Both the position numbers and the translations under genes were made by a program. DNA of 64,000 nucleotides from Isurus oxyrinchus (lineage: Eukaryota). The stretch lies in NCBI GenBank assembly GCA_026770705.1, contig JANJGN010000121.1, positions 496,001 through 560,000 on the forward strand, given 5' to 3'. The notes under the pieces are model-generated. The model searched no databases and was not told the origin of the DNA. It worked only from the letters and a program-made list of their open reading frames with translations. Below, one piece after another: positions 727 through 59,687 of the stretch (within the stretch, counting starts at the first letter, position 1; every line of letters begins with the position of its first letter).

Positions 727-1095
727 CAGAAACGTGAAGCTGGGTTACAGGGTAATAGTTATGGCTCGGACCATTGTCAAATTCTATTCTGAAAAAATAA
801 GGTCCTGCATCTTCCCGTCTGATGTTGTTTATAATCAGGGAACAGTCGCCATCTTTCAGGTCTCCAGACAGCCGGGTCCGATGGTGGAACCGTGGTAACT
901 CGTGACTGTGATCCTTGGAGTGAAAGACAATGGGAGCCCAGGGAATATGTTTCTCATTATGAAACCAGACTCCACCTCGCGGTTGGTTTTCCAGACACGA
1001 TGGATAACTGTAATGACATGGAATCTGTACACAGGAACCTTCCTGCGCTGTCACCTCTCGTGGAGTGTCACCTTTCCACTCTTGTGAGGGTTCAG
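727..1095 (-). CDS. G1 second V-set Ig exon, Siglec-like (369 nt, phase 1-1)
   Basis: ccccag acceptor, gtaagt donor. EGSCVQIPCHY...GDCSLII...DAGPYFFRIE shows the Siglec Cys pattern (no F-strand Cys) and the essential Arg. Positions 1-60 match the V-C2 intron of the paralogs, so the C2 exon should lie just outside the window. Confidence 0.92.
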
Positions 1096-1154
1096 CTGGG
1101 GAGAGAAATATCAATATTTAACTCTGAATGGTTTGTGGATCCAATAGACTTAAA

Positions 1155-1990
1155 ATTTACAGATGAGGCTGAATTGGGGGGATGGTCAATACTGAGGAGA
1201 ATGGCAACAAATTATTTTGGCAAGATGAATAGAAAAACAGGATATTATTTAAATGGAGACAGGCTGCAGAATGCAGTACAGAGGGATCTGGGTGTCCTTG
1301 TACATGAATCACAGAAAGTCAGCATTCAGGAACACCACGGAATGAGGAAGGCACGTGGAATGTTGGCCTTTATTGCAAAGGGATGGAGTATAAAAGGAGG
1401 GAAGTCTTGCAACAGCTGCACAGGGTGAGATTGTATCAGGAGCAGTGTGTACAGTTCTGGTCTCCTTACTTAGGGAGGGATAGACTTGCATTGAAGGCAG
1501 TTCAGAGGAGGTTCACTGGGCTGATTCCCGGGATTAAAGGGTTTGTCCTGTGAGGAAATGTTGAGCAGGTTGGGCCTGTATCCATTGGAGTTTAGAAGAA
1601 TGAGGGGTGACCTTATTGAAACATATCCGATTCCGAGGGGGCTTGACAGGGTGAATGCTGGGAGGATGTTTCCCCCTCGTGGGGGAATCTAGAACCAGGG
1701 AGCACAGTTTCGGAATGAGTGCTCTCCCATTTAAGACTGAGATGAGGAGGAATTTCCTCTCTCAGAGTGGCGCTAGCCTGTGGAATTCTCTTCCCCAGAG
1801 AGCAGTGGAGGCTGGGCCATTGAATAGACTCAAGGCTGAGTGAGGCAGGTTTTTGATCGACAAGGGAGTCAAGGATTTGGGGGACAGGCAGGAAAATGGA
1901 GTTAAGGCCACAACCAGATCAGTGAGAGCAGGCTCGAGGGGCCGAATGGCCTGATCCTGTTCCTATTTCTTATGTTCCTACATTCTTACC
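1155..1990 (+). mobile_element. CR1-like LINE 3' fragment
   Basis: Decayed RT C-terminus (QRDLGVLVHESQK...GMLAFIAKG) and typical aggctcgaggggccgaatggcct...cctatttcttatgtt tail. Confidence 0.8.
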
Positions 1991-2054
1991 TTCTTAAAAT
2001 ATTAAAGCTGCAGAATAAACATGCAAGTGACTGACCCGCTCGACCCACCTTCCA

Positions 2055-3050
2055 TCAGGGGCTGGAGGAGGTTACACAGATAAGGAGGTTTGTGGGTGCT
2101 GGAGGAGGTAACAGAGATAGGGAGGGCTGTAGATACTGGAGGACATTACGCAGATAGGGAGGGTGGTAGGACCTGGAGGAGGTTGCAGAGATAGGGAGGG
2201 CTGTAGGGATTTGAGGAGTTTATGGCGATGGGGAGCGTGTAGGGACTGGAGGAGGCTGCAAGGGCAGAGAGGGTTTTAGGGGCAGGAGGAGTTTACAGGA
2301 ATAGGAAAAGTTGTAGGGGCTGGACGGATTGCAGAGGTAGGGAGGGTTGGAAAGGCTGGTGGAGGTTTCAGAGGTAGGGAAGGTTGCAGGGACTGGATGA
2401 GTTTACAGAGATGGGGGAGTTTTTGGGGCAGGATGGGGTTACAGAGATAGGGAGGGTTGTAAGGGCAGGACGAGGTTACATAGATATGGAGTGTGGCTGG
2501 GGCTGAGGGAGGATACAGAGATAGGGAGGGTTATAATGGCTGGAGGAGGTTACAGAGATAAAGGAAACTCTTAGGGACTGGAGGAGGTTACAGAGATAGG
2601 GAGGGTTGTAGTGGGCTGGAGGAGGTTACAGAAATATGAAGGGTTGTAAGAGATGGACCAGCTTACAGAGATAGGGAGAGGTATTCGGTCTGGAGGAGGT
2701 TGCAGAGATAGGGGAGGTTGTTAGGACTGGAGGAGGCTACAAATATCGCGAGGGTTATCGGGGCTTGAGGAGGTTAAAGAGATAGGGAGGGGTGTTGGGT
2801 CCGGAGGAGTTTGCAGTGATAGGAATGGTTTTCGGGATTGGAAGAGAGTACTGAGATAGGAGGGTTGTAGGGACTGGAGGAGTCTCCTGAGAAAGGGAGG
2901 GTTGTAGGGACTGGAGGAGGCTCCTGAGATAGGGAGGGTTGTAGGGACTGGAGGAGGCTCCTGAGATAGAGAGGGTTGTAGGGACTGGAGGAGGCTCCTG
3001 CGATAGGGAATGTTGCCGTGGATGAAGATAAAGGAGGAGATTACTGTAAT
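2055..3050. repeat. Degenerate ~37-bp tandem array (ggactggaggaggttacagagatagggagggttgtag)
   Basis: Directly visible repeat units abutting the 3' end of an L2-like LINE. Confidence 0.85.
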
Positions 3051-4035
3051 AGGGAGGAAAAATATTCAATAATTTGGACATTGAGACTTTGCTTGACCAG
3101 GAGCTAGTCTCGGTCATCGAGCAGAGCGGGTGATAAGGGAACGGGACTTGGTGTGAGTAAGGACGTGGTCAGCAGTTTTGGATGGCCTCAAGTTTATGGA
3201 GTGTAGAGCATGTGTTGGAACAGTCGAGTCTGGAGGTAATGAAGGCGTGGATGAGGGTTTCAGCAGCAGATGAGCTGAGACAGGGTGAAGTCGTACGACG
3301 TTATGGAGGTGGAAATAGACGGTGTTAGTGAGGGCGCAGATAGGAGGCCGGAAGCTCATCTCAGGATCAAATGGGACAACAAAGCTGTGAACAGATTGGC
3401 TTCAATCTCAGAGAGCTGCCAGGGAGAGGAATGGAGTTGGTAGCGAGGGAACAGAGTTTGGAGCGGGGAATGAAGACAATGGCTTCAGTCTTTCCAATAT
3501 TTAATTGGAGGGAATTTCTGCCCATCCAGTACTGGATGTCGGATAAGCAGCCTGATAATTTAGCAGCAGTGGAGGAGTCGAGAGAGGTGGTGGTGAGGTA
3601 GAGCTGGGGATCCTCAGTGGACAGGTGAAAACTAATACTGTTCAGATGATGCTGCAAAGCCATTGCAAGTGATTCTCTGGCTACGATGAGATGGATAAGA
3701 ATGGAGCCAGGGGAGAGCAGTTCCACCCAGCTGGACGACAGTGGAGAGGGGTTGGAGGAGGATGGTGTGGTCGAGCGTGTCAAAGGCTGCAGACAGATCG
3801 AGAAGGACGAGGAGGGAAAGTTGACCTTTGTCACAGTCACACAGGATGCCATTTGTGACCTTGATAAGAGCTGTTTCAGCACAGTGGCTGGGGTGGGAAC
3901 CTGATTGGAGGGATTCAAACATGGAGTTCCGGGAAAGATGGAACCGGATTCGGGAGATGGAAACACTTTCAAGGACTTTGGAGGGGAAAGAGAGGCTGGA
4001 GATGGGATGGGGGTTTACACGGACAGTGTGAGGGG
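3050..4035 (-). mobile_element. L2-like LINE reverse transcriptase fragment, decayed
   Basis: LQSGSHPSHCAETALIKVTN...LLVLLDLSAAFDTLDHTILL and LQLNIGKTEAIVF RT motifs across frameshifts. Confidence 0.85.
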
Positions 4036-4286
4036 TGGAAGGTGTAGTGGGGAGGAGACACTTCACTCAGGGGGGAGGTGTCATCACCCCTCAGCTCGGT
4101 TTACGTTACAGCTATGATGTGGATTCAATCACACACAATAAGCTCATGGATCTGGGAGCAGAAATAGACAAATCATTAAAAATAGTGACGCTGGTTAACA
4201 CAGCCAAAAAACAAGCAAATCAAACACTATTATTTCCCATTGAGTGTTGGATGTGAATTGGTGAGTAATTATAACACAGCACTTAC

Positions 4287-4664
4287 CAGAAACCTGAAGC
4301 TGGGTTACAGGGTAATAGTTATGGCTCGGACCATTGCCAAATTTTATCGTGAAAAAATAAGGTCCTGCATCTTCCCGTCTGATGTTGTTTATAATCAGGG
4401 AACAGTCGCCATCTTTCAGGTCTCCAGACAGCCGGGTCCGATGGTGGAACTGTGATAACTCGCGACTGTGATCCTTGGAGTGAAAGGCTATAGACCATTT
4501 AGACCATTTGTTCTGTATGTATCTTCTCATTTTCCAGATTCCGACCTGTGGTTTCTTTACCAAATCTGATGGATAACTGTAATGACATGGAATCTGTACA
4601 CACGAACCTTCCTGCGCTGTCACCTCTCGTGGAGTGTCACCTTTCCACTCTTGTGACAATCCAA
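4287..4664 (-). CDS. G1 first V-set Ig exon (378 nt, phase 1-1), essential Arg replaced by Thr
   Basis: ccccag/gtaagt boundaries, open frame, YFFTIKF instead of YFFRIEF. Confidence 0.9.
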
Positions 4665-9945: not shown

Positions 9946-9985
9946 CTTCGAGAAGTGACAGGAGGAAGTAGGATTTCCCGATCAT
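9946..9985 (-). CDS. G1 leader (signal peptide) exon CDS, MIGKSYFLLSLLE
   Basis: ATG plus 40 nt to G|gtaat donor (phase 1), acceptor ttcacag at 10026. Four paralogous copies in the window. Confidence 0.85.
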
Positions 9986-13253: not shown

Positions 13254-13393
13254 TCAAACAGTCTGTCGACTTCCTTTCACTGTTTGTCTCTCCCAGACAC
13301 AGACTCCAGTGATAGTGATAACCACAGCCACAAGGAATATCACAGCTCGTATTCCCAGGATCAGGATCACATGCAGAATCTCTCCTCCACTGT
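13254..13393 (-). CDS. G2 terminal TM exon with intramembrane Arg and short tail (activating type)
   Basis: ttctctag acceptor; phase-1 translation (D)SGGEILHVILILGIRAVIFLVAVVITITGVCVWERQTVKGSRQTV*. Near-identical copy at 59548. Confidence 0.88.
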
Positions 13394-15061
13394 CTAGAGA
13401 ACACACAGAAAGAAATCATCACTGACTCTCCGCTTTCAATCTCTCACTCTGGCTGAACAATCAAGCTTCATATCACTGCAACATTTGCTGTAATATTGAC
13501 CCATCCACTGGGATTCAATGTGGAATGAATGTTTTCATTGTAAACACTCTAAGAGTGGACAATCGGAACTTTCCCCTTAGCGTGGAACATTGGTGAGAAT
13601 GGATCATTGTGCTGTTGGACTCCCTGTCCAATGTTACTCTCCATCGCTGTGTACAGGATTGTGCTGTAGAAAATTCTGGAAACGTTTAGTGCAGGGTGGA
13701 AATCCATCTCGGACGCGTGTGCGAATCGAGCAGAATCGAGATGGACTTCCCCACGGACTTACACCCCCCGCTTAATAAACAGTTCCAATCTTTACCCAGA
13801 GAGAGGGGAGAATGTGGAACTCACTCCCACAGGGATTGGTTGAGGTGAACAGTATCGATGTATTTAAGGGGCAGGAGGGTCGGTAACCAGAGGGACACAG
13901 ATTGACCAACTGGAGGGGGAGATGATGAGAATTTGTTTTGACAGAGCGAGTTGTTGTGATCTGGAAGGTGCTGCCTGAAAGGGCGGTGGAAGCAGATTCA
14001 ATAGGAACTTTCAAAAGGGAAATTGGATAAACACTTGAAGGAGGAAGATGGGGGCAAAGTGGAGTGGTGGTTAGTGGATCTGATTGGATAGAACATTGAA
14101 AGACCTGGCACAGGCACAGTGGGCTGAATGGCCTCCTCCTGTGCTGTATCATTCTCCGCTTCCATGATCTCTCCCCCAGTCAGTAACCACTCCAGATCCC
14201 TCTTGAAGGCGACAGAGAAACAGGAACTACCACACCCACTGACAGCACATTCTCAAGGATCCCTACTCTCTGGGAAAAGATGAACTCCCCAACATCCAGC
14301 CTATTCCTGCTTCCCAGAGAGTGTAAACCCTTCAGGGAGGCACTGAGGAAGTTTTCAATAAAATGAATTATCAAATCTATCATTTGAGAAATAATTTAAT
14401 TCTGATGAACTCACAGCTTGTGTAGCAAACTGGGAAGTGGAGTTGCTTGAAAAGCTGGGAAACACAAGGATTAAGTGCTACAATGCCACCACTGGTGGGA
14501 GACTGTAACTACAGCGTGACGTTTACATAGGCAGTCATCATTATAAACAGGGGCATTGGACATACTGGGAAATATGTGCACTGGAAAGGTGAGTAAATGA
14601 TGTAAGATTTTCACCAGCAGGAATTCTCTAACTAAACCTCTCCACTTCTCTCTTACTCTCAGATACACAAACAAAATCACACAGAATCAGATAAGGAGGA
14701 GTTGGGGCCGGTGATTGTTCGAAGGGTTAGCTTTCAGGAAGCTTCTTAAAGGGAGAGAGAGAGTTGGAGAGGCAGAGAGTATCTGTGAGTGTCTCTATGC
14801 ATCTGAGTGTCTGTAATAGACTTTGTAATTTCCATTTCTTCCATAAACATGATTGGGAACACAAATCCCAGAATCCAGGCCAACTCTCCAGTGCAGTACT
14901 CAGGTAAGCCACAGGGCAGTGTGTGCTAGTGTGTTTGTTTGTGAGTGTGTCTTTGTAATTGCTCATACATGTGTGTCTGCACGTGTCTATTTAGTTCTGT
15001 ATATTTGTGTGTGTTTGTGCAATGTTTGAATCTGAGAGAGATGTTGTCTGTGTACACTCAC

Positions 15062-15537: not shown

Positions 15538-15834
15538 CTTGCACAGTTAGTACGAGGGTCCGCTCCGATGAAACAGATGGATATCTCACTCTGCAGCTGA
15601 GAGTGTGTCCGTGGTGTTTGAGTGATGGGATCAGGGTCAGAACAGAAGTATAGGTCAGAGTGACACCATGCTGAGTTACAGTGTTTGAGACTGATCCAGG
15701 TACGTCAGTGGGAGTGTCCCAGGTTAAGACAGGTGCTGCTGTTCCATTGCACGTTGTGTTGAAGGTGCAGCTTACATCCACACACTTTCCTGCAATAATT
15801 TCAGCAGGGAATATCATGGGTTTATCTGTGAAAT
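15538..15834 (-). CDS. G2 first C2-set Ig exon (297 nt, phase 1-1)
   Basis: gttag/gtaagt; DFTDKPMIFP...VSCTFNTTCNG...LTW...LSCRVRY...LTVQ, Siglec domain-2 pattern. Confidence 0.92.
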
Positions 15835-16693: not shown

Positions 16694-17068
16694 CAGAAAC
16701 ATGAAGCTGGGTTACAGGGTAATAGTTATGGCTCGGACCATTGTCAAATTCTATTCTGAAAAAATAAGGTCCTGCATCTTCCCGTCTGATGTTGTTTATA
16801 ATCAGGGAACAGTCGCCATCTTTCAGGTCTCCACACAGCCGGGTCCGATGGCGGAATCTTTGATCCCTGTGACTGTGACCCTCAGAGTGAAAGGCTATAG
16901 ACCGTTTCGGCTGTGGGTTCCCATCTATTCCTTTCAACCAGATTCCGACACGTGATCTCCCTACGAAATTTGATAAGTAACTGTAATGACATGGAATCTG
17001 TACACAGGAACCTTCCTGCGCTGTCACCTCTCGTGGAGTGTCACCTTTCCACTCTTGTGACAGTCCAA
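16694..17068 (-). CDS. G2 single V-set exon (375 nt)
   Basis: Canonical splice sites, open frame, YFFRIE. Confidence 0.92.
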
Positions 17069-17766: not shown

Positions 17767-17806
17767 CTTGGAGAAGTGACAGGAGGAAGTAAGATTTCCC
17801 GATCAT
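17767..17806 (-). CDS. G2 leader exon CDS, MIGKSYFLLSLLQ
   Basis: ATG, phase-1 donor gtaat. Confidence 0.87.
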
Positions 17807-22516: not shown

Positions 22517-22614
22517 CTGTAATAGAAACAGAAATGATCAGAGTGACAATCAGAGTGATCAGTGTTTAGTATTATTGATCCAAATCGAAAATTCCACCCA
22601 CAATAGATACATTA

Positions 22615-24580
22615 ATTATTGATACTGAACAGGGTTTGATTATTGATTCTGAACAGTGTTTGATTATTGATTGTGAACAGTGTTTGATTATTGATACTGA
22701 ACGGGGTTTGATTACTGATTCTGAACGGGGTTTGATTATTGATACTGAACGGAGTTTGATTATTGATTCTGAACGGGGTTTGATTATTGATTCTGAACGA
22801 GGTTTGAATATTGACACTGAATGGGGTTTGATTATTGATCCTGAACAGGGTTTGATTATTGATCCTGAAAGGGGTTTGATTATTGATACAGAACAGTGTT
22901 TGATTATTGATACTGAACAGGGTTTGATTATTGATTCTGAACAGTGTTTGATTATTGATACTGAACGGGGTTTGATTATTGATTCTGAACAGGGTTTGAT
23001 TATTGATTCTGAATGGGGTTTGATTATTGATACTGAACGGGGTTTGATTATGGATTCTGAATGGGGTTTGATTATTGATTCTGAATGGGGTTTGATTATT
23101 GATCCTGAACAGGGTTTGATTATTGATTCTGAAAGGGGTTTGATTATTGATTCTGAAAGGGGTTTGATTATGGATTCTGAACGGGGTTTGATTATTGATC
23201 CTGAACAGGGTTTGATTATTGATCCTGAAAGGGGTTTGATTATGGATTCTGAAAGGGGTTTGATTATGGATTCTGAACGGGGTTTGATTATTGATACTGA
23301 ACGGGGTTTGATTATTGATTCTGAAAGGGGTTTGATTATTGATACTGAACGGGGTTTGATTATTGATTCTGAACGGCGTTTGATTATTGATACTGAACGG
23401 GGTTTGATTATTGATTCTGAATGGCGTTTGATTATTGATACTGAACGGGGTTTGATTATTGACATTGAACGGGGTTTGATTATTGATTCTAAATGGTGTT
23501 TGATTATTGATTCTAAACGTTGTTTGATTATTGAACCTGAATGGAGTTTGATTATTGATTCTGAACTGGGGTTGATTATTGATACTTAACGGGGTTTGAT
23601 TATTGACATTGAACGGGGTTTGATTATTGATTCTAAATGGTGTTTGATTATTGATTCTAAACGGTGTTTGATTATTGAATCTGAATGGAGTTTGATTATT
23701 GATACTGAACAGTGTTTGATTATTGATTCTGAACAGTGTTTGATTACTGATTCTGAAAGGGGGTTGATTATTGATACTGAACGGTGTTTGATTATTGATT
23801 CCGAACGGGGTTTGATTATTAATTCTGAACGGGGTTTGATTATTGATACTGAATGGTGTTTGATTATTGATTCTGAATGGGGTTTGATTATTGATTCTAA
23901 ACGGTGTTTGATTATTGAACCTGAACGGAGTTTGATTATTGATACTGAACAGGGTTTGATTATTGATTCTGAAAGGGGGTTGATTATTGATACTGAACGG
24001 GGTTTGATTATTGATTCTGAACGGGGTTTGATTATAGATACTGAATGGTGTTTGATTATTGATTCTGAATGGGGTTTGATTATTGATACTGAACGGGGTT
24101 TGTTTATTAATTCTGAACGGGGTTTGATTATTGATTCTGAACGGGTTTTGATTATTGATACTGAACGGGGTTTGATTATTGATTCTAAACGATGTTTGAT
24201 TATTGAACCTGAACGGAGTTTGATTATTGATTCTGAACAGTGTTTGATTATTGATTCTGAAAGGGGGTTGATTTTTGATACTGAACGGGGTTTGATTATT
24301 AATTCTGAATGGGGTTTGATTATTGATACTGAATGATGTTTGATTATTGATTCTGAACGGGGTTTGATTATTGATACTGAATGGGTTTTGATTATTGATT
24401 CTGAACGGGGTTTGATTATTGATTCTGAACGGGGTTTGAGTATTGATTCTGAACGGGGTTTGATTATTGATACTGAACGGGGTTTGATTATTGATACTGA
24501 ACGGGGTGTGATTATTGATTCTGAACGGGGTTTGATTATTGATACTGATCGGGGTTTGATTATTGATTCTGAACGGTGTT
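22615..24580. repeat. 24-bp minisatellite (ttgattattgattctgaacggggt), roughly 80 copies, in the last intron of G3
   Basis: Directly visible. Confidence 0.97.
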
Positions 24581-24709
24581 GGGTGTGAGTTTGGTTGGGT
24601 TTGGGAGTGACTGTATAAAACATTGCAGATACAGGACTGGAGCAGCCATATCAATAACCAGGGTACTGGAGCAGCTGAGAGGCTGGGGATCCTGTGGTGT
24701 GTGACTCAC

Positions 24710-29211: not shown

Positions 29212-29339
29212 CTAAAAACAAATAAACATCAATTAAGTTACACTGACTGTGAAGCACTTTGAAAGACACTGAGAATGTGAAAGGTGTGATATCAATATAG
29301 GTTCTTTCACCACAAAGCCCATAATCCAGCCAGACACCT

Positions 29340-30035
29340 CAGTTCAGTACTGAGGGTGTGCTGCACTGTGGGAGGGTCAGTACTGAGGGAGTGCTGCACT
29401 GTCAGAGAGTCAGTACTGAGGGAGTACTGCACCATCAGAGATTCAGTACTGAGGGAGTGCTGAACTGTCAGAGGGTCAGTACTGAGGGAGTGCTGTACTG
29501 TCGGTGGGTAAGTACTGAGGGAGTGCTGCACTGTCAGAGAGTCAGTAAGGAGGGAGTGCTGCACTGTCAGAGGTTCAGTACATAGGGACTGCTGCACTGT
29601 CTGATGGTCAGTACAGAGGGGTTGTTGCACTGTCGGAGGGTCAGAAATGAGGATGTGCTGCACTCTCAGAAGGTCAGTACTGAGGGGGTGCTGCACTGTC
29701 GAAGAGTCATTACTGAGGGGGTGCTGCACTGTGGGAGGGTCAGTACTGAGGGAGCACTGCACTGTTGAAGGGTCAGTACTGAGTGAGTGCTGCACTGTCG
29801 AAGGGTCAGTACTGAGGGAGTGCTGCACTGTTAGAGGGTCAGTACAGAGGGAGTGCTGCACTGTCAGAGGGTCAGTACTGAGGGAGCACTGCACTGTCAA
29901 AGGGTCAGTACTGAGGGAGTGCTGCACTGTCAAAGGGTCAGTACTGAGGGAGTGCTGCACTGTCAGAGGATCAGTACTGAGGGAGTGCTGCAGTGTTGGA
30001 GAGTCAGTATTCAAGGACTGCTGCAGTGTCAGAGG
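29340..30035. repeat. 33-bp tandem array, about 21 units
   Basis: Visible; the equivalent introns of G2 and G4 carry only about one unit. Confidence 0.92.
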
Positions 30036-30154
30036 CGGATTTGTATCAGTTAAAGACTATTGATTTGTTGCTAAACACAATGCAGTTGTGGGATCTTGCA
30101 GTGTACAATGAAGAGCATTCTAGCTAATGTAGATGGAAGGGTGTCCGTTCTTAC

Positions 30155-30451
30155 CTTGCACAGTTAGTATGAGGGTCTGCTCCGATGAAACAGATGGATA
30201 TCTCACTCTGCAGCTGAGAGTGTGTCCGTGGTGTTTGAGTGATGGGATCAGGGTCAGAACAGAAGTATAGGTCAGAGTGACACCATGCTGAGTTACAGTG
30301 TTTGAGACTGATCCAGGTACGTCAGTGGGAGTGTCCCAGGTTAAGACAGGTGCTGCTGTTCCATTGCACGTTGTGTTGAAGGTGCAGCTTACATCCACAC
30401 GCTTTCCTGCAATAATTTCAGCAGGGAATATCGTGGGTTTATCTGTGAAAT
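30155..30451 (-). CDS. G3 first C2 exon (297 nt)
   Basis: Paralog of 15538-15834, intact splice sites. Confidence 0.92.
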
Positions 30452-30822
30452 CTAACAGACAGGGAATGGATCCTTTTAGAGAAATATAATGTGAAGCATC
30501 AGTTCAAATAGAAACCACAGTCCCATAACAGAAAGCACTTTTACAAGGATGATATCAGAACTGAGATGTTTTAACGATCCTGATAGACTGTTAGACACGA
30601 TTCGAGAGATCGATGGGAGTGGAATACATTTAATCATTGATATTAAAGTGAGTTTTAAATGTTGCTTTAGGACTGAACTGGAAGCTATCACCAGGTTATT
30701 GAGAATCAGACAGTGTGTTATAATAAGCTGTGTTTTGTGTTAATATGTAAACGTCACAGTTTGTGTTATTTCCCATTGAGTGTTGGATGTGAATTGGTGA
30801 GTAATTATAACACAGCACTTAC

Positions 30823-31191
30823 CAGAAACATGAAGCTGGGTTACAGGGTAATAGTTATGGCTCGGACCATTGTCAAATTCTATTCTGAAAAAATAAGGTC
30901 CTGCATCTTCCCGTCTGATGTTGTTTATAATCAGGGAACAGTCGCCATCTTTCAGGTCTCCAGACAGCCGGGTCCGATGGTGGAACCGTGGTAACTCGTG
31001 ACTGTGATCCTTGGAGTGAAAGGCAATGGGAGCCCAGGGAATCTGTTTCTCATTATTAAACCAGACTCCACCTCGCGGTTGGTTTTCCAGACACGATGGA
31101 TAACTGTAATGACATGGAATCTGTACACACGAACCTTCCTGAGCTGTCACCTCTCGTGGAGTGTCACCTTTCCACTCTTGTGAGGGTTCAG
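30823..31191 (-). CDS. G3 second V-set exon (369 nt)
   Basis: Intact, YFFRIE, extra BC-loop Cys. Confidence 0.92.
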
Positions 31192-31249
31192 CTGGGGAGA
31201 GAAATCTCAATATTTATCTCTGGATGGTTTGTGGATCCACTGAACCCGA

Positions 31250-32120
31250 TATTTACAGATGAGGCTGAATTGGGGGGATGGTCAATACTGAGGAGGACTG
31301 CAACAAATTGCAGGATGATATACATTCTGATGAAGAGTCATACGGACTCGAAACGTTAACTCTGTCTTCCTCTCCACAGATACTGTCAGACCTGCTGAGT
31401 TTTTCCTGCAATTTTTGTTTTAGTTACAGATTTCCAACAGCTGCAGAATTTTGCTTTTACATTACAGAAAGATATTAATAAAGTTGCAGAATGGGCAGGT
31501 CATTGACAAATGAGTTTCTACGTTAATAAATGTGAGGCATTACATTTTGTTCAGGAAAATGAGGAGCTTGTATCTTACCTCGAAAATAAGAATCTAATTG
31601 GGGTAGAGGAACAACGTGATCTGGGCCGGAAATACAGGAATCAGTAAATGTGGGGACGCAGGTTAACAAGGGAATTAAACATACAAACTAAACACTCGAG
31701 ATTATTTCTCCAGGGATTGAATTGAAAAGTAGAGAAGTGATGTGAAACTTGTCCTGAACCTTGGTCTGACTGCACCTGGAGTCACGTGTGCCGTTCTGGT
31801 CCCCACATTGTAAAAAGGATATGGAGACAGTGGAGAGGGTGGTAAAAAGCTTCACAAGGATGATCTCCGCAATGTGAGGCTTTACCTATCAGGAGAGGCT
31901 GAACAGGCTGGGTCTCTGTTCTCTTGAACAGAGAAGGTTGAGGGGTGACCTCATTTGACCTTTGAAGTAATGAAAGGTTTTGATCGAGTAGACATGGAGA
32001 GAGTGTTTCCACTCCTCACAATGAACAAAACCAGAGGCTGACAATATAACATCCTCACTAATAAATCCAATGGGGAATTCAGAAGAAAATTATTTTCCCA
32101 GAGACTGGGGAGAATGTGTA
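31250..32120 (+). mobile_element. CR1-like LINE fragment with nested Penelope-tail insertion
   Basis: EEDCNKLQDDI, decayed RT C-terminal motifs. Confidence 0.7.
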
Positions 32121-32848
32121 CTTAAAGAATCACTTCATTGGCTGTGAATCAGTTTAGGATCGTCCTGAGGTGGTGAAAGGCGCTATGGAAATGTGAGACT
32201 TGCTTTTGTATTTTGAAAGCAGGTTTCCAAGATTGAGATGGGAACTGAGAGGTAACAACAATCAGCAGCAACTTTCCTATTTTCAAACTTGGTGGGGAAT
32301 GTGTCACTGAGCTGAATACACTTTCACTCCCAGACCCTTGAATTGCCAACACTGGGGTGTGGGTGATGGAGCAGTCCACAGCTCATGGAACCCTGGCTCA
32401 TCATTCTCTCAGAGATCTGGGTCACTGATCCCATTGCTCTCTATGGGATCTTCCTGTGCACAAACTCACTGCCACGTTAGACAGTGACTATACTTCAAGA
32501 ATTTCTTCATTGTCTGTGAAGTGATTTGGTACGTGGTGAAAGGTGCTATAGAAATGCAAGTCTTTACTTTGTCGATTTGCCAGACTTTTAAATAGGGATT
32601 AGAGAGTTCTATGTGAGTGGATAACCTGATAACATTGATGGACACAGTCAACACATTTAACCATTGATATTAAAGTGAGTATTAGACGTTGCTTTAGGAC
32701 TGAATTGGAAGCTATCACCAGGTTATTGAGATCAGACAGTGTGTTATAATAAGCTGTGTTTTGTGTTAATATGTAAACGTCACAGTTTGTGTTATTTCCC
32801 ACTGAGTGTTGAATGTGAATTGTTGAGTAATTATAACACAGCACTTAC

Positions 32849-33217
32849 CAGAAACGTGAAGCTGGGTTACAGGGTAATAGTTATGTCTCGGACCATTGTC
32901 AAATTCTATTCTGAAAAAATAAGGTCCTGCATCTTCCCGTCTGATGTTGTTTATAATCAGGGAACAGTCGCCATCTTTCAGGTCTCCAGACAGCCGGGTC
33001 CGATGGTGGAACCGTGGTAACTCGTGACTGTGATCCTTGGAGTGAAAGGCAATGGGAGCCCAGGGAATCTGTTTCTCATTATTAAACCAGACTCCACCTC
33101 GTGGTTGGCTTTCCAAATGTGCTGGATAACTGTAATGACATGGAATCTGTACACACGAACCTTCCTGCGCTGTCACCTCTCGTGGAGTGTCACCTTTCCA
33201 CTCTTGTGACAGTCCAA
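32849..33217 (-). CDS. G3 first V-set exon (369 nt)
   Basis: Intact, YFFRIE. Confidence 0.92.
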
Positions 33218-36200
33218 CTGGGGAGAGAAATATCAATATTTAACTCTGGATGTTTTTTTGATCCATAATTCTTGATATCCACTCCCTCCATCACTGGGGC
33301 ACAGTGGCTGCAGTTTGGACCATCTACAGGACACACAAGTAACTCCCCAAGGTTTCACAATGGATCGATGAGAGTCCTGGACACAGGAGTGGACAAGTTC
33401 ATTCTACCTTGGTTCATGGTCCTCAGGACTCTATTTAGTTTTTTCAAATTATTCATTCATGGGATTTATTACCCATCCCATGTCCATCAGAGGCATTTAA
33501 TAGTCAACCACATTGCGGTGGGATTGGAGTGATATGTAGGCCACACTGGGTAAGGGTGGCAGATTTCCTTCCCTGAAGGTGATCAGTGAACCAGGCTTTT
33601 TAATCCCATTCATCTGCCATGATGGAATTCACACCCAGGGCCCCAGATCATCACCCTGGGCCTCTGGAATACTAGCCCAGTGACAATACCTCTCTGCTAC
33701 CGCTTCCCCTTAGTGAAGCCAGTCTTCTACCCAACACAGTGTCTACAAGACGCACTATTTGAGATCCATTCAATGCTGATTTACAAGACAGGACAATGGA
33801 TTAGGAGCCCTCAGAACTCCCCCCATTATCACCGTCATGAATCACTAATTAGCCTAACATTCCTGTCTGCTCTTCAACACAGCTGATTGAATCAGATTAG
33901 CCAATCTGATTGGTGTTCATTCCCTCTTCAACTTTTAAGGAATCACCAATCACTCGGCCTCTAGTTATTCCCCTGCCCACAAGAGGGAACATTCTCTGTC
34001 TACCCAGTCAACCAAAACATTTCATCTAATCCTAGTGGTGCTTGAGTATATAGTCGGGAATCCAGGGCAATGGAGCCTCAGGAGAAGAGATGGAAACGCT
34101 GTGAGGTGGAATGTTACTGAGGCCATCCGAGTTGAAGCGACTTTTGGAGAGAATTCCAAGGCAAGATCTTCGAAGTTGAAGATTGGAATCCCTCATGAGA
34201 GAAACAGAGTTTCAGTGAGATTGGTTGACTGACAGTGTTCACTGATGTCCGGGTGGGTTGTTGTGAAATCCATGGGATCTGTCTTGGTCGCGTTTACAAT
34301 TTAATGAATAATGTGGCTGTGAGACCACAGTTTGTCTGTTAATTCACATGAGCTAATGTTAATCCAGAATGTTAGGGTATAAGGTGGATATTGTGAATTA
34401 TTTTATCTTTCTGAGCTGGTGCAGTCAAGTTTATTTTTGTTTGTTTAAAATCCATGGAATTTTGTAGCTTTATTCTCTTCGCAAGTGTCTTAAATCTCAA
34501 ACCTCTTCTACTTGAAACAAAATATTATTGGTTCCTAACTATAAATTTTCAAAAAAATTGGGTGTCTGTTCCTCCATCAGCAACTCTTCAGAATCCTGCT
34601 GAAGTCACGGATATTTCAGAAGGACAGGGAACAAGAAGTTTCTGGTATCAGCGTTTTGTGTGGGGCCCAGTTCAGTTTGAACAAATAAACAACACCATCT
34701 TTGAAAGTCATGAACCCACTGCAGCGGCACCTCCGACACATGCAGAGCTCAGGCGAGAGGCGCTTTGTTAGTGTGTTTCACAGTGTCTGCTGGAGTAGGG
34801 TCAGTGCTGAGAGGGTCTGCTCAAGGATCATAACAACCTGCACTTGCACCTTCCAAGTAATAAGATTTTGTAAATGTATTCATTCATGGGATGTGGGCGT
34901 CGCTGCCAAGGCCAGCATTTGCTGCCCATCTCTAATGTCCCGTGACATAATCTCTGTAGCAGAGTAGAGACAATCATGATCACTCAGGATATTTGACATC
35001 TATCCACATGAGCAGCTTTACCTTCCTTCTCTCTTTCAGTTATCTTACTCCCTTATTGAAGTTTCTAGCATGGTGAGAACTGGATGGTTTGCTCGGACAT
35101 TTCAGAGGAACCACGTTGCTATGAGTCTGGAGTCACATGTAGGCCAGACCAGATATAGACGGCAGATTTCCTTCCCTAAAGGCCATTAGTGAACCAGATG
35201 GGTGTGTATGACAATCGATGATAGTTTCATGGTCTCCATTACTGAGACTAACTCCCATTAGTGTAAACAGAGTGAACAGTTTTCCATTGATCCCACCTTT
35301 CCCGTTCTCTCCGGTATTTTACACACTATTGCTCGATAATTTGATTCTGCCAAGGACCCCTTGGAAAATTATGGACACCAATTAGACCACCGATGGAATA
35401 AGGAATCTCGTTGGATCCTCATTGTCTGAGGAATCTCTATGCATTCTCATTGTCTAAGGAATCTCTTTGGATCCTCATTGTCAAAGGGATTATTTCTGAT
35501 CCAAACCCCATATTGTTGTATTGTTGATTCCGATGCAGCATTGTAGACTGACTTGTCCCCAAGCTCAGCACTGACCCTACTCCAGCAGACCCTGTGAAAC
35601 ACACTAACAAAGTGCCTCTAGCCTGAGCTCTGCATGAGTCGGAGGTGCCACTGTGGTGGGTTCATGACTTTCAAAGATGGTGTTGTCATTTTTTTTGTTC
35701 CAACTGAACTGGGCCCCACATGAAGTGTTGATACCAAAGACCTTGTGTTCCCTGTCCTTCTGAAACATCTGTGATTCAGCAGGATTCTGAAGATTTGCTG
35801 ATAAGGGTCTTAAATTGTCTGATTGTTGATTGATACAACACAGGAGGAGCTCATGTGACCCATCGTGCATGTGCTGATTCTTTCCCAATTCCTCTCCAAC
35901 ACCTTTCGCACATTCCTGCAAATTTCCCTTCAAGTATTTATCCAGTTCCCCTTCTGAAAGTTCCTGTTGAATCTGCTTCCACCGCTCTTTCAGGCAGTGA
36001 GGCAATGGTCTCTCTCTGAGCTGCAAAGTGCCCAGATTCCGTGAAATTTAAACTATGCAGCAGATCAGAGACAATCATGATAACTCAGAATATTTGTCAC
36101 CTTTACACACAGACAGCTTTGCCTTCCTTCTCTCTTTCAGTTATCTTGCTCTCTTATTGAAGTATCTAGCAAGGTGAGAATGGACAGGAAGTGTGACACT

Positions 36201-36674: not shown

Positions 36675-36714
36675 CTTGGAGAAGTGACAGGAGGAAGTAA
36701 GATTTCCCGATCAT
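36675..36714 (-). CDS. G3 leader exon CDS, MIGKSYFLLSLLQ
   Basis: ATG, phase-1 gtaat donor. Confidence 0.87.
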
Positions 36715-42631: not shown

Positions 42632-42874
42632 TCACTTGAATCTGATCTGTGCGTATTCCGTCTCCTCTTCCCTGTGGACAGACCCATCACCACTGGGCAC
42701 CCTGAAGACTTGGGGATTGGCGTAGAGAAGGTCGGCGGGATTGTCAGGGTTCCCATGTCCAGCATCGCCTCCCACTGCACCTTCAGAGAGACCCCGGGGA
42801 GCTGGGGTCTCCCCCTCACTAGTTGTGTCTCTGGTTGCGTTCCGGGGCTCAGTAATCAGCACGTTCTGTTTACC
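42632..42874 (-). CDS. Terminal cytoplasmic exon T1 (phase 0), GKQNVLITEPR...DLLYANP...EETEYAQIRFK*
   Basis: tttctctgtag acceptor; distal ITSM TEYAQI as in CD33-type Siglec tails; AATAAA at ~42061-42066. No parent ectodomain found in the window. Confidence 0.75.
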   Translation of the reverse strand, partial: GKQNVLITEPRNATRDTTSEGETPAPRGLSEGAVGGDAGHGNPDNPADLLYANPQVFRVPSGDGSVHREEETEYAQIRFK

Positions 42875-45612: not shown

Positions 45613-45861
45613 TCAGTTTCGCTTGAATCTGATCTGTGCGTATTCCGTCTGCTCTTCCCTGTGGACAGACCCATCACCACTGGTCACCCTGAAGACTTGG
45701 GGATTGGTGTAGAGAAGCTCGTTGGGATTGTCAGGGTTCCCATGTCCAGCATCGCCTCCCACTGCACATTCAGAGAGACCCCGGGGAGCTGGGGTCTCCC
45801 CCTCACTAGTTGTGTCTCTGGTTGTGTTCCGGGGCTCAGTAATCAGCACGTTCTGTTTACC
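45613..45861 (-). CDS. Terminal cytoplasmic exon T2, ...ELLYTNP...EQTEYAQIRFKRN*
   Basis: Intact paralog of T1. Confidence 0.72.
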   Translation of the reverse strand, partial: GKQNVLITEPRNTTRDTTSEGETPAPRGLSECAVGGDAGHGNPDNPNELLYTNPQVFRVTSGDGSVHREEQTEYAQIRFKRN

Positions 45862-48564: not shown

Positions 48565-48813
48565 TCAGTTATGCTCGAACCTGATCTGTGCGTATTCCGT
48601 CTCCTCTTCCCTGTGGACAGACCCATCATCACTGGACATCCTCAATACTTGGGGATTGGCGTAGAGAAGGCCGTCGGGATTGTCGATGTGCCAATGTCCA
48701 GCATCGCCTCCCAATGCACCTTCAGAGAGACCCCGGGGAGCTGGGGTCTCCCCCTCGCTAGTTGTGTCTCTGGTTGTGTTCCGGGGCTCAGAAATCAGCA
48801 CGTTCTGTTTACC
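48565..48813 (-). CDS. Terminal cytoplasmic exon T3, ...GLLYANP...EETEYAQIRFEHN*
   Basis: Intact paralog of T1; no J exon upstream. Confidence 0.7.
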   Translation of the reverse strand, partial: GKQNVLISEPRNTTRDTTSEGETPAPRGLSEGALGGDAGHWHIDNPDGLLYANPQVLRMSSDDGSVHREEETEYAQIRFEHN

Positions 48814-50541: not shown

Positions 50542-50581
50542 ATGATCGGGAAATCTTACTTCCTCCTGTCACTTCTCCAAG
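50542..50581 (+). CDS. G4 leader exon CDS, MIGKSYFLLSLLQ
   Basis: Acceptor at 50501, ATG, G|gtaat. Confidence 0.87.
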
Positions 50582-54471: not shown

Positions 54472-54837
54472 TTGGACTACCACAAGTGTGGAAAGGTGAC
54501 ACTCCACGAGAGGTGACAGCGCAGGAAGGTTCGTGTGTACAGATTCCGTGTCATTACAGCTACCCATCATATTTAGTACCGAGATCACCTGTTGGAATCT
54601 GGTATATGAGACGGAATTGGGAAACATGGTCTATAGCCTTTCACTCCAAGGATCACAGTCGCGAGTTACCACGGTTCCACCATCGGACCCGGCTTTCTGG
54701 AGACCTGAAAGATGGTGACTGTTCCCTGATTATAAACAACATCAGACGGGAAGATGCAGGATATTATTTATTCAGAACAGATTTTGACAGCAGGAATAGA
54801 TACAACGACCGTCCTGAAACCCAGCTTCATGTTTCTG
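54472..54837 (+). CDS. G4 first V-set exon (366 nt)
   Basis: cctag/gtaagt; open; YYLFRTDF keeps the Arg. Confidence 0.9.
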
Positions 54838-56567: not shown

Positions 56568-56933
56568 CTGAACCCTCGCAAGAGTGGAAAGGTGACACTC
56601 CACGAGAGGTGACAGTGCAGGAAGGTTCCTGTGTACAGATTCCATGTCATTACAGTTATCCATCGTGTCTGGAAAACCAACCGTGAGGTGGAGTCTGGTT
56701 TAATAATGAGGAATGGAGAACATCGTCTATAGCCTTTCACTCCAAGGATCACAGTCACGAGTTACCACGGTTCCACCATCGGACCCGGCTGTCTGGAGAC
56801 CTGAAAGATGGCGACTGTTCCCTGATTATAAACAACATCAGACGGGAAGATGCGGGTCCTTATTTTTTCAGAATAGAATTTGACAATGGTCCGAGCCATA
56901 ACTATTACCCTGTAACCCAGCTTCACGTTTCTG
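56568..56933 (+). pseudogene. G4 second V exon, inactivated
   Basis: CGA>TGA at 56684-56686 and donor GT>AT at 56934. Confidence 0.9.
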
Positions 56934-57661: not shown

Positions 57662-57958
57662 ATTTCACAGATAAACCCACGATATTCCCTGCTGAAATTA
57701 TTGCAGGAAAGCGTGTGGATGTAAGCTGCACCTTCAACACAACGTGGAATGGAACAGCAGCACCTGTCTTAACCTGGGACACTCCCACTGACGTACCTGG
57801 ATCACTCTCAAACACTGTAACTCAGCATGGTGTCACTCTGACCTATACTTCTGTTCTGACCCTGATCCCATCACTCAAACACCACGGACACACTCTCAGC
57901 TGCAGAGTGAGATATCCATCTGTTTCATCGGAGCGGACCCTCGTACTAACTGTGCAAG
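57662..57958 (+). CDS. G4 first C2 exon (297 nt), interdomain Cys>Trp
   Basis: gttag/gtaagt; CTFNTTWNG. Confidence 0.9.
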
Positions 57959-58433: not shown

Positions 58434-59547
58434 GTTAGTTAAGACAAACTTCAACATCTCTCTCAGATTGAAACACTACAGAAACTCACATAAATATCCA
58501 GCCTTAAATAGACACCTGCAGACACACAATCCCACATCTATGAGCACACACAAAGACACACTCACAAACAAACACACTAGCACATACTCCCCTGTGGATT
58601 ACCTGACCTCCCTCAGTGCTGCACCGGAGAGTTGACCTGGATTCTGGGATTTGTGTTCCCTTTCATATTTATGGAAGAATATGGAAATTGCAAAGTCTAT
58701 TACAGACACTCAGATGCACAGAGTTACTCACAGATACTCTCTGCCTCTCCAACTCTCTATCCTCCTTTAAGAACCTTCCTGAAATCTAACTCTTTGACCA
58801 GTCACCTGTCCCAATTCCTCCTTACGTGATTTTGTGTGAAATTTTGTTTGAGTATCTGAGAGTAAGAGGGAAGTGGAGAGGTTTAGGAAGGGAATTCCTG
58901 TTGCTGAAAAGCTTACATCAAGTTCTCAGCTTTCCAGTGCCCATTTTTCACATGATGTCCATGTTCATAATGGGGATTGCCTATGTAAACATCACGCTGT
59001 AGTTACACTCTCCCACCAGTGGTAGCACGGTAACACTTAACCCTTGCATCTCCAAGCTTTTCAAGCAATTTCACTTCCTAATTTGCTACTATTCACCTCA
59101 ACCATTCCCTGTGGGAGCGAGTTCCACATTCTCCCCTCTCTCTGGGTAAAGATTGGAACTGTTTATTAAGCGGGGTGTGTAAGTCCGTGGGGGAGTCCAT
59201 CTCGATCCTGCCCGATTCGCACACGCGTCCGAGATGGATTTCCACCCTGCACTAAACGTTTCCAGAATTTTCTACAGCACAATCCTGTACACAGCGATGG
59301 AGAGAAACATTGGACAGAGAGTCCAACAGCACAATGATCCATTCTCACCAATGTTCCACGCTAAGGGGAAAGTTCCGATTGTCCACTCTTAGAGTGTTTA
59401 CAGTGAAAACATTCATTCCACATTGAATCCCAGTGGATGGGTCAATATTACAGCAAATGTTGCAGTGATATGAAGCTTGATTGTTCAGCCAGAGTGAGAG
59501 ATTGAAAGCGGAGAGTCAGTGATGATTTCTTTCTGTGTGTTCTCTAG

Positions 59548-59687
59548 ACAGTGGAGGAGAGATTCTGCACGTGATCCTGATCCTGGGAATACGAGCTGTG
59601 ATATTCCTTGTGGCTGTGGTTATCACTATCGCTGGAGTCTGTGTCTGGGAGAGACAAACAGTGAAAGGAAGTCGACAGACTGTTTGA
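59548..59687 (+). CDS. G4 terminal TM exon with Arg (CGA 59592-59594) and short tail
   Basis: (D)SGGEILHVILILGIRAVIFLVAVVITIAGVCVWERQTVKGSRQTV*; AATAAA at 60071-60076. Confidence 0.88.

What the first reader, a model, noticed from the sequence alone, without database searches (positions are those of the whole stretch)
727..4664. Tandem V-V architecture with a position-specific extra cysteine
G1, G3 and (ancestrally) G4 have two V exons under one leader. Every second-position V (727-1095, 30823-31191, 56568-56933) reads IPCHYSYPSC, with an extra Cys 7 residues after the B-strand Cys. No first-position V has it (D, N, H, Y instead), even the G3 first V, which is otherwise almost identical to its neighbour. 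In Siglecs the V-domain GxC Cys bonds to a Cys 6 residues after the B-strand Cys of the next domain (here SCTFNTTC). Inference: the second V gained a Cys to accept the interdomain disulfide from the first V, so the protein is a true V-V tandem and not a mutually exclusive splice choice.
Basis: partly seen in the sequence, partly recalled or inferred. Interest (0 to 1): 0.78.

Follow-up and report, generated by a model that had tools for sequence, protein, structure and literature searches.

The report
Shark double-headed Siglec, extra cysteine
Three shark immune-receptor genes of the sialic-acid-sensing Siglec family carry two sugar-binding head exons in a row, and the second head always has one extra cysteine, probably a staple to the first head, although that bond is not shown.

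Summary
The window holds four Siglec-like genes with seven V-set exons. All seven are phase 1-1 with intact acceptors. G1, G3 and G4 have two V exons behind one leader. All 3 second V exons read IPCHYSYPSC; none of the 4 first or sole V exons has that Cys.

The rule holds in public shark and ray models. The Cys is in 0 of 124 first V domains and 29 of 41 non-first ones. Eight further non-first ray V domains carry a Cys in the C-C' loop instead.

In one probable RNA run, 3 contigs join a V-exon 3' end to the second-V acceptor, so V-V mRNA exists. How often one V is skipped could not be measured.

The closest known case is mammalian Siglec-12, which has two V-set domains. There the extra Cys is sporadic.

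Verdict: a new variant of a known kind. The scan had already noted the same rule twice on other DNA of this genome.

The parts
727..1095 (-). G1 second V-set exon (phase 1-1). It has the canonical Arg (YFFRIE) and the extra Cys codon TGT at 995-997.
   Evidence: Pfam V-set 5.6e-12 and Ig_CD22; best PDB matches are Siglecs
4287..4664 (-). G1 first V-set exon. It has Asp at the extra-Cys position and Thr in place of the canonical Arg (YFFTIK).
   Evidence: Pfam V-set 8.4e-12
9946..9985 (-). G1 leader exon, coding part (MIGKSYFLLSLLE + 1 base, donor gtaata)
30823..31191 (-). G3 second V-set exon, extra Cys codon at 31091-31093. Its acceptor is joined to a V 3' end in 3 contigs of run X1.
32849..33217 (-). 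G3 first V-set exon, His at the extra-Cys position, 355/369 identical to G3 V2. It is joined to the leader in 3 contigs of run X1.
36675..36714 (-). G3 leader exon, coding part
30155..30451 (-). G3 first C2-set exon with SCTFNTTC (B-strand Cys and the +6 acceptor Cys)
   Evidence: joints at 30451
54472..54837 (+). G4 first V-set exon (Tyr at the extra-Cys position)
56568..56933 (+). G4 second V exon, decayed. The extra Cys codon is kept (56666-56668), but there is an in-frame stop (QP*GG) and the donor is gt->at.
57662..57958 (+). G4 first C2-set exon; the +6 acceptor Cys is replaced by Trp (SCTFNTTW)
50542..50581 (+). G4 leader exon, coding part
16694..17068 (-). G2 sole V-set exon (comparison). 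It has Asn at the extra-Cys position and an extra Cys elsewhere (RLC).
17767..17806 (-). G2 leader exon, coding part

Best explanation
The window holds a cluster of shark Siglec-like receptor genes of the CD33-related/MAG type. In G1 and G3, and formerly in G4, the V-set exon was duplicated in tandem. Both copies lie between one leader and the first C2 exon, and both can be spliced into one mRNA, giving leader-V1-V2-C2. In ordinary Siglecs the odd Cys at the start of the V domain's B strand (GxC, five residues before the B-strand Cys) is tied to a Cys in the B-C loop of the next domain (C-x5-C). Here V1 keeps that donor Cys but is followed by a V domain, not a C2 domain. The second V has a new Cys in its own B-C loop, 7 residues after its B-strand Cys. 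It most likely accepts the bond from V1, while V2's own donor Cys goes to the C2 domain as usual. The result would be a chain of stapled domains with two sialic-acid-binding heads, or up to four in other sharks. Shown: the exon anatomy, the Siglec kinship, the position rule across sharks and rays, and the existence of a V-to-V2 splice junction. Inferred: the disulfide itself, how often both V exons are included, and sialic acid binding.
For: Anatomy:
- There are seven phase 1-1 V exons and four leaders, and no leader lies between V1 and V2.

Family:
- The 18 best PDB rows for the V2 exon are all Siglecs, E 9e-16 to 3e-9, and CD22 also matches further down. Pfam gives V-set plus Ig_CD22.
- The C2 exon's C-x5-C aligns with MAG and CD33.
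- Passages describe the interdomain disulfide in Siglec-6 (C46-C172) and CD33 (C169).

Position rule:
- An HMM of the window's V exons was run on the 266 proteins fetched by then. It gave 175 V domains of at least 95 bits in 134 proteins.
- Cys at the IPCHYSYPSC position occurs in 0 of 124 first V domains that directly follow a signal peptide.
- It occurs in 29 of 41 V domains that follow another V.
- 8 further non-first ray V domains have a Cys at match column 48 or 49 instead, and 1 has a Cys at column 107.
- The other 4 domains with this Cys sit in N-terminally truncated models: three behind a partial V1, and one (P0152) starting at residue 1.
- In V-V-V and V-V-V-V models (P0159, P0163, P0165, P0166, P0168) every non-first V has the Cys.
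- In Carcharodon models the second V has the first-V type N-terminus (VGLSQEW) yet keeps the Cys.
- In G3 here and in Cetorhinus P0197 the first V is V2-like around the site yet lacks the Cys.
- Among 12 path-disjoint pairs of first and non-first V domains on the best tree, the extra Cys goes with the non-first position in 9-10, the other way in 0, and does not differ in 2-3.

Transcripts:
- In run X1, 3 contigs end at 31192 with 11 loose letters. Their reverse complement is the 3' end of a V exon of the 'cac' type, as in G3 V1. The junction reads ...LHVS|AEPSQE, as in the RefSeq models.
- 3 contigs join the leader to V1.
- V-to-C2 joints appear in all four runs laid: the two forms together cover X1, X4, X6 and X7.

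Geometry by topology:
- The donor Cys and the new Cys within V2 lie 12 residues apart along one strand, so they cannot pair with each other (inference).
Against: - No structure or model was available, so the distance between the two cysteines is untested.
- 3 of 41 non-first V domains have no extra Cys (P0001 and P0151 second V, P0171 second V), and their preceding V still keeps its donor Cys.
- In rays the extra Cys of V2 and V4 lies in the C-C' loop. By standard Ig topology that loop is at the far end of the domain from the preceding V, so the same geometry does not explain it.
- Cysteine parity over the V array plus the first C2 is 11 even and 12 odd in 23 multi-V models, against 71 even and 13 odd in 84 single-V models. 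Scattered unpaired cysteines are therefore tolerated in this family.
- The comparative counts rest on automatic gene models, many of them isoforms or paralogs of each other.
- On well-supported branches only 2 independent pairs exist, so there is no statistical power.
- No joint from V1 to V2 was listed as a joint. The evidence is 11 loose letters in 3 contigs of one run whose RNA label is a guess.
Confidence: 0.55

Rival explanations
1. The two V exons are cassette exons used mostly one at a time (leader-V1-C2 or leader-V2-C2). The V-V form is a minor isoform, and the extra Cys of V2 serves something other than a bond to V1.
For: Both V exons are symmetric (phase 1-1, length a multiple of 3), so skipping either keeps the frame. 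V-to-C2 joints of both 3'-end types are present: 30451->30823 in X1, X4 and X7, and 30451->32849 in X1, X6 and X7. Primate Siglec-12 has predicted single-V isoforms that keep V1 only (P0278, P0279, P0280, P0302, P0303). Several RefSeq isoforms exist for the shark genes.
Against: A V2-only product would have an odd Cys count over V2 plus C2-1: 4 + 3 in G3. No signal-peptide-adjacent V in 124 public models carries the Cys. The only loose letters listed at the V2 acceptor are a V 3' end, not the leader; 421 loose ends were not shown. The V-to-C2 joints can come from single-V paralogs such as G2, because V 3' ends are shared.
Confidence: 0.2
2. V1 and V2 are both in the protein, but the extra Cys is not bonded to V1. 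It is free, or it makes an intermolecular disulfide such as a covalent dimer or a bond to a partner chain.
For: Odd cysteine counts are common in this family (12 of 23 multi-V and 13 of 84 single-V models). Extra cysteines occur at scattered positions: match columns 8, 30, 40, 69, 107, 109, 110, and GKC in the first C2. The ray position (C-C' loop) does not fit the V-C2 geometry.
Against: A dimerising or free Cys has no reason to be barred from first or sole V domains, yet it occurs in 0 of 124 of them. The Cys sits in the loop that in C2 domains accepts the bond. In Mobula P0187 and in 10 other models the count is exactly one extra Cys per V-V junction.
Confidence: 0.15
3. The Cys is a neutral lineage marker. 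One ancestral second-V exon happened to have it, and all later second, third and fourth V exons descend from that exon, so the position rule reflects ancestry rather than function.
For: Second V exons of G1, G3 and G4 are each other's closest relatives (94.8-98.4% nt identity). Supported branches give only 2 independent contrasts.
Against: Gene conversion has repeatedly mixed first-V and second-V sequence on both sides of the site while the Cys stayed with the position (G3 V1; Cetorhinus P0197 and Carcharodon P0186 and P0205). Rays carry a second, different extra Cys in non-first V domains. The best tree needs at least 9 changes of this Cys and 12 of position.
Confidence: 0.1

Closest known systems
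Mammalian Siglec-12 (Siglec-XII in humans), the known Siglec with two V-set domains
   Same: It is a CD33-related-type Siglec with two N-terminal V-set domains, each with GxCxxxxC, followed by C2 domains (passages of PMC6288428; primate sequences). Predicted single-V isoforms also exist. NCBI names many of the shark models 'Siglec-12'.
   Different: In mammals the second V has no consistent extra Cys. Three Old World monkeys have one at the start of C'. Chimpanzee has two, including one at +7 in the B-C loop. Orang-utan, galago, tree shrew, ground squirrel and rhinoceros V-V models have none. Shark arrays reach four V domains. The primate V domains score only 41-58 bits against the window's V profile, against 150-250 bits for shark V domains, so a common origin of the duplication is unlikely. 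That was not tested by a tree.
Canonical Siglec V-C2 interdomain disulfide (Siglec-6 C46-C172; CD33 C169)
   Same: The donor motif GxCxxxxC is in the V domain. The acceptor Cys is in the B-C loop of the following domain, six residues after its B-strand Cys. This is present in the window's first C2 exons and aligns with MAG and CD33.
   Different: Here the proposed acceptor domain is itself a V-set domain and the spacing is +7, not +6. Which of the two V cysteines is the donor is recalled from database annotation of CD33, not from a call.
RefSeq multi-V Siglec models of sharks and rays (for example Carcharodon P0186 and P0205, Cetorhinus P0199 and P0197, Mustelus P0004 and P0005, Scyliorhinus P0163)
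   Same: They are the same family and architecture. Second V domains are 70-84% identical to the window's, with the same IPC..YPSC motif.
   Different: They are automatic models. I found no paper that describes the architecture or the Cys rule.
Amphibian multi-V Siglec-like models (Bufo bufo P0049, Xenopus laevis P0037)
   Same: They have two or three tandem Siglec-type V domains before the first C2.
   Different: In Bufo the donor Cys is absent from V1 and V2 (Asn, Ser) and kept only in the V next to the C2. In Xenopus all donors are kept and no extra Cys is seen. These are other answers to the same mismatch, if the models are right.

Membership tests
Siglec family (sialic acid-binding Ig-like lectins) | N-terminal V-set Ig domain related to Siglec V domains | tested here: met
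   The 18 best PDB rows are all Siglecs (Siglec-5, MAG, Siglec-7, -8, CD33, sialoadhesin, Siglec-10, -15), and CD22 matches further down. Pfam V-set and Ig_CD22 are both above their cut-offs for the three V exons scanned.
Siglec family (sialic acid-binding Ig-like lectins) | Conserved Arg on the F strand (YFFR) needed for sialic acid binding | tested here: met
   Arg is present in 6 of 7 V exons; G1 V1 has Thr. It aligns with the Arg of Siglec-5 and MAG.
Siglec family (sialic acid-binding Ig-like lectins) | Intra-sheet B-E disulfide pattern: Cys on B and E strands, none at the usual F-strand place | tested here: met
   At sequence level only: Cys at match columns 26 and 83, and YFFR with no Cys on F, in all 7 exons. 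That this pattern defines Siglecs is recalled knowledge.
Siglec family (sialic acid-binding Ig-like lectins) | Cys pair for the V-C2 interdomain disulfide (GxC in V, C-x5-C in the first C2) | tested here: met
   GSC is in all 7 V exons. SCTFNTTC is in the G2 and G3 first C2 exons and aligns with MAG and CD33. G4 has Trp instead.
Siglec family (sialic acid-binding Ig-like lectins) | Binding of sialylated glycans | not testable with these tools
   This needs a glycan array or cell binding with Arg mutants.
Siglec family (sialic acid-binding Ig-like lectins) | ITIM-type tail, or a charged transmembrane segment for an adaptor | tested here: inconclusive
   TEYAQIRF tail pieces lie at 42638-42655, 45625-45642 and 48577-48594. 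TM exons with Arg (ILGIRAV) lie at 59526-59684 and near 13257-13415. Which tails belong to G1 and G3 was not worked out.
Two-V-set Siglec (Siglec-12 type architecture) | Two V-set exons between one leader and the first C2 exon | tested here: met
   (G1, G3, and G4 with a decayed second V)
Two-V-set Siglec (Siglec-12 type architecture) | Both V domains in one mRNA and protein | tested here: inconclusive
   3 contigs of one run join a V 3' end to the V2 acceptor, but only by 11 letters, and the share of such transcripts is unknown. RefSeq models chain the exons.
Two-V-set Siglec (Siglec-12 type architecture) | Orthology to mammalian SIGLEC12 | not tested
   No tree with mammalian V domains was built. 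The name in RefSeq is automatic.
Disulfide-stapled V-V chain (proposed here) | Bond between the V1 donor Cys and the V2 B-C loop Cys | not testable with these tools

The most novel reading that the evidence does not exclude
Sharks and rays build rigid rods of two to four sialic-acid-binding V domains in one Siglec chain, each V stapled to the next by a disulfide that copies the V-C2 staple. The acceptor Cys was invented at least twice: in the B-C loop in sharks and in the C-C' loop in rays. It is kept at non-first positions against repeated gene conversion. This would mean the odd donor Cys of a Siglec V domain must be paired for the receptor to fold or be exported. That rule would also bear on mammalian Siglec-12 and on the toad models that dropped the donor instead.
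Probability: 0.35. Interest if true: 0.65.

Novelty: new variant of a known kind. Interest (0 to 1): 0.55.

Why it matters
Siglecs are usually drawn with one glycan-binding head, and the single known exception (Siglec-12) is little understood. A lineage in which two to four heads are the rule gives two things. It is a natural experiment on how the Siglec interdomain staple constrains domain shuffling. It is also a ready design for multivalent, rigid glycan-binding scaffolds. In addition it shows selection holding a single codon apart between two exons that gene conversion otherwise keeps nearly identical.

Tried and rejected
1. I looked for transcript-derived protein fragments across the V1-V2 junction with the word search on the V2 exon. 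It gave only 3 proteins of 139-178 aa, all single-V genome models. Nothing was gained.

2. I considered reading the joint 30451->32849 as skipping of V2. I rejected this because the last bases of V exons are shared among paralogs. The sides are 18-23 letters in two of the three runs, and single-V genes such as G2 give the same junction.

3. I considered comparing depth of V1, V2 and C2 exons. I rejected this because all four runs are contigs and the tool states that such depth cannot rank parts of a gene.

4. Cysteine parity as a test of 'all paired' did not discriminate: 11 even and 12 odd in multi-V models. The first version also counted cysteines beyond the C2 domain.

5. The independent-contrast test on supported branches gave only 2 pairs and had no power. 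My own pairing on all branches leans on unsupported branches and on a tree blurred by gene conversion.

No fold search was run either.

7. The idea that the extra Cys marks 'the V next to the C2' rather than 'any non-first V' is rejected. In P0159, P0163, P0165, P0166 and P0168 the middle V domains have it too.

8. The idea that the AEPSQEW N-terminus and the Cys are one linked block is rejected. Carcharodon second V domains start VGLSQEW and still keep the Cys.

9. I did not ask for supplementary files of any paper. The whale shark genome paper lists Siglec gene families only in supplements, and these may hold copy numbers I did not see.
Full report
**What is there**

The region 727-4664 lies on the minus strand. 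It holds two V-set immunoglobulin exons of one gene (G1), separated by about 3.2 kb of repeats and retroelement debris.

A motif scan of all six frames, followed by blastn with one V exon, finds exactly seven such exons in the window:
- G1 V2 727-1095
- G1 V1 4287-4664
- G2 V 16694-17068
- G3 V2 30823-31191
- G3 V1 32849-33217
- G4 V1 54472-54837
- G4 V2 56568-56933

Each exon length is a multiple of three. Each begins two bases into a codon after a pyrimidine tract and AG. Each ends one base into a codon before GTAAGT. The exception is G4 V2, whose donor reads ATAAGT and which has an in-frame stop.

Four leader exons (MIGKSYFLLSLLQ or ...E) exist, at 9946-9985, 17767-17806, 36675-36714 and 50542-50581. 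blastn finds no fifth, so no leader lies between V1 and V2.

First C2 exons of 297 bases follow at 30155-30451 (G3), 15538-15834 (G2) and 57662-57958 (G4). That of G1 lies beyond the window's start.

All three second V exons read IPCHYSYPSC, with TGT for the last Cys. The four first or sole V exons have D, N, H or Y there.

**What family**

The V2 exon's 18 best solved relatives are all Siglecs: Siglec-5, MAG, Siglec-7, Siglec-8, CD33, sialoadhesin, Siglec-10 and Siglec-15, with E from 9e-16 to 3e-9. CD22 also matches further down the list. Pfam gives V-set and the CD22-like first Ig domain.

The F-strand Arg (YFFR) is present in six of the seven exons; G1 V1 has Thr.

The first C2 exon carries C-x5-C, which aligns with the same motif of MAG and CD33.

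Passages of two papers describe the V-C2 interdomain disulfide. One gives Siglec-6 Cys46-Cys172, from an AlphaFold model plus mutants (PMC10122656). The other gives CD33 C169 (PMC7426717). That the donor is the first Cys of GxCxxxxC is my recollection of the CD33 annotation, not a tool result.

The closest models are from Carcharodon and Cetorhinus.

**Does the rule hold elsewhere**

A full scan of 1.84 billion representatives with the V2 exon gave 1,339 proteins at E up to 0.001. Among the best 150, many matched in two to four stretches. With the word search on one of them (168 hits, best 120 listed) I held 266 proteins.

I built an HMM from the window's seven V exons. I kept domains that covered match columns 22-100 and scored at least 95 bits, which selects the shark and ray clade. 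That left 175 domains in 134 proteins.

The Cys at match column 33 is distributed as follows:

| V domain class | With the Cys at column 33 |
|---|---|
| First, directly after a signal peptide | 0 of 124 |
| Directly following another V | 29 of 41 |

- Of the other 12 non-first domains, 8 have a Cys at column 48 or 49, in the C-C' loop. All 8 are from rays (Hypanus, Hemitrygon, Mobula).
- One of the 12 has a Cys at column 107.
- Three of the 12 have none: the middle V of two Scyliorhinus canicula isoforms, and the second V of one Mustelus model.
- Four more domains with the column-33 Cys are in truncated models. Three follow a partial V1, and one (P0152) starts at residue 1.
- In three-V and four-V models every non-first V has the Cys, so it does not mark 'the V next to the C2'.

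These are automatic gene models, with isoforms and paralogs among them, so the counts are not independent events.

**Ancestry or selection**

The second V exons of G1, G3 and G4 are each other's nearest relatives. A single origin of the Cys followed by exon duplication would therefore explain much of the pattern.

Against pure ancestry:
- G3 V1 is 355/369 identical to G3 V2. Seven of the 14 differences lie in 21 bases around the Cys codon. 12 of 100,000 random placements are as clustered, with the window size chosen after the fact.
- Cetorhinus P0197 shows the same picture: the first V is V2-like around the site, but has Asp there.
- Carcharodon second V domains have the first-V type N-terminus and still keep the Cys.
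- Rays use a second site.

I built a quick tree without the two loops. On it, position changes at least 12 times and the extra Cys at least 11 times. Only 2 contrasts lie on supported branches, which gives no power. My own pairing over all branches gives 12 pairs: 9-10 go the expected way, none the other way, and 2-3 show no difference. The tree is weak and blurred by conversion, so I read this as a lean, not a proof.

**Are both V exons in one mRNA**

One search for runs and one laying of contigs were allowed. I laid 30100-33500 (first C2, V2 and V1 of G3) on four runs, all kept as contigs. X1 and X4 are from one organism and sample. X6 and X7 are from a second organism, probably a relative. 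Their RNA label is a guess.

In X1 the exon bins sum to thousands, against about 460 in plain intron bins. That fits RNA, but the tool warns against reading depth.

Findings:
- In X1, 3 contigs end at the V2 acceptor with 11 loose letters. Their reverse complement is the end of a V exon of the 'cac' type, as in G3 V1. The junction reads ...LHVS|AEPSQE, exactly as in the RefSeq models.
- In X1, 3 contigs join the leader's end to V1.
- Joints from a V donor to the first C2 acceptor were seen in X1, X4 and X7 (to 30823) and in X1, X6 and X7 (to 32849).
- These V-to-C2 joints cannot be assigned. The last bases of V exons are shared among V1, V2 and single-V paralogs, and two of the three 32849 joints have sides of only 18-23 letters.

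So a V-to-V2 junction exists. How often V1 or V2 is skipped is unknown. 421 loose ends and 2 joints were not shown.

**Is the bond plausible**

By Ig topology, the B-C loop of a domain faces the preceding domain. That is where C2 domains of Siglecs carry their acceptor, at +6. The new Cys of V2 is at +7 in the same loop.

Within V2, the donor Cys and the new Cys are 12 residues apart along one strand, so they cannot pair with each other.

In G3 the count is V1 3 + V2 4 + C2 3 = 10, which is even. V2 alone with the C2 would give 7.

Against a neat picture:
- Over 23 multi-V public models the count for the V array plus first C2 is even in 11 and odd in 12. For 84 single-V models it is 71 even and 13 odd.
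- This is because single extra cysteines are scattered through the family.
- The C-C' loop site of rays does not fit the same geometry.

**Comparison with what is known**

Siglec-12 is the known Siglec with two V-set domains (passages of PMC6288428). I fetched primate and other mammalian Siglec-12-like proteins with the third word search and scanned 14 of them:
- Three Old World monkeys have one extra Cys in the second V, at the start of C'.
- Chimpanzee has two, one of them at +7 in the B-C loop.
- Orang-utan, galago, tree shrew, ground squirrel and rhinoceros V-V models have none.
- Five predicted single-V isoforms keep V1.

So mammals show no steady rule.

Toad models lack the donor Cys in the two V domains that are not next to a C2. 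Xenopus models keep all donors without an acceptor.

Five literature searches found no paper on multi-V Siglecs of cartilaginous fish or on this Cys. I saw search listings for all five, and passages of four papers.

The scan itself had already noted the same rule twice on other pieces of this genome, with follow-ups that reached the same reading. I saw those notes only after my own counts.

**Verdict**

The reading as a true V-V tandem stapled by a new disulfide is the best explanation, at about 0.55. A V-V transcript is shown. The bond, and the share of V-V transcripts, are inferred. It is a new variant of a known kind: a two-V Siglec with the Siglec interdomain staple.

Noticed in passing
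window 4287-4664 (-): G1's first V has Thr in place of the canonical sialic-acid-binding Arg (YFFTIKF), while G1's second V keeps Arg. In this gene only the inner head may bind sialic acid.
   Followed up: partly
window 56568-56933 and 57662-57958 (+): In G4 the second V exon is dead (in-frame stop, donor GT->AT). The first C2 exon has also lost the +6 acceptor Cys (SCTFNTTW), which leaves the donor Cys of G4 V1 without either partner. G4 otherwise ends in a TM exon with an Arg (59526-59684).
   Followed up: partly
window 16694-17068 and 15538-15834 (-): The single-V gene G2 has an extra Cys in the V domain (RLCGD). It also has a donor-like Cys in its first C2 (GKCVDVSC, five residues before the B-strand Cys). 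The same GKC is in public models P0010, P0017, P0159 and P0179. Its partner is unknown.
   Followed up: partly
public models P0003, P0155, P0187, P0152, P0154 (rays): Ray multi-V Siglec models alternate two kinds of extra Cys: the C-C' loop in V2 and V4, and the B-C loop in V3. The V2 and V4 types have Lys for the canonical Arg. The C-C' site does not fit the V-C2 staple geometry.
   Followed up: partly
public model P0049 (Bufo bufo), P0037 (Xenopus laevis): The toad V-V-V model lacks the donor Cys in V1 and V2 (Asn, Ser) and keeps it only in the V next to the C2. The Xenopus V-V-V model keeps all three donors with no extra Cys.
   Followed up: no
public proteins P0277, P0069, P0274, P0275 (primate Siglec-12): The chimpanzee Siglec-12 second V has a Cys at +7 after the B-strand Cys, the same place as in sharks, plus one at the start of C'. 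Three Old World monkeys have only the latter, and orang-utan has neither.
   Followed up: partly
window 31240-31467 and 32038-32151: Two short intron stretches between G3 V1 and V2 collect very high summed contig depth and dozens of contigs with loose ends in all four runs. They look like a dispersed repeat family that is transcribed or very abundant.
   Followed up: no
window 29310-30056 and 22575-24705 (-): There are long open frames made of tandem repeats: units reading ...SLSTDPLTVQH... and ...NNQTPFRI.... They lie in introns or downstream parts of G3 and look like minisatellites rather than coding sequence.
   Followed up: no
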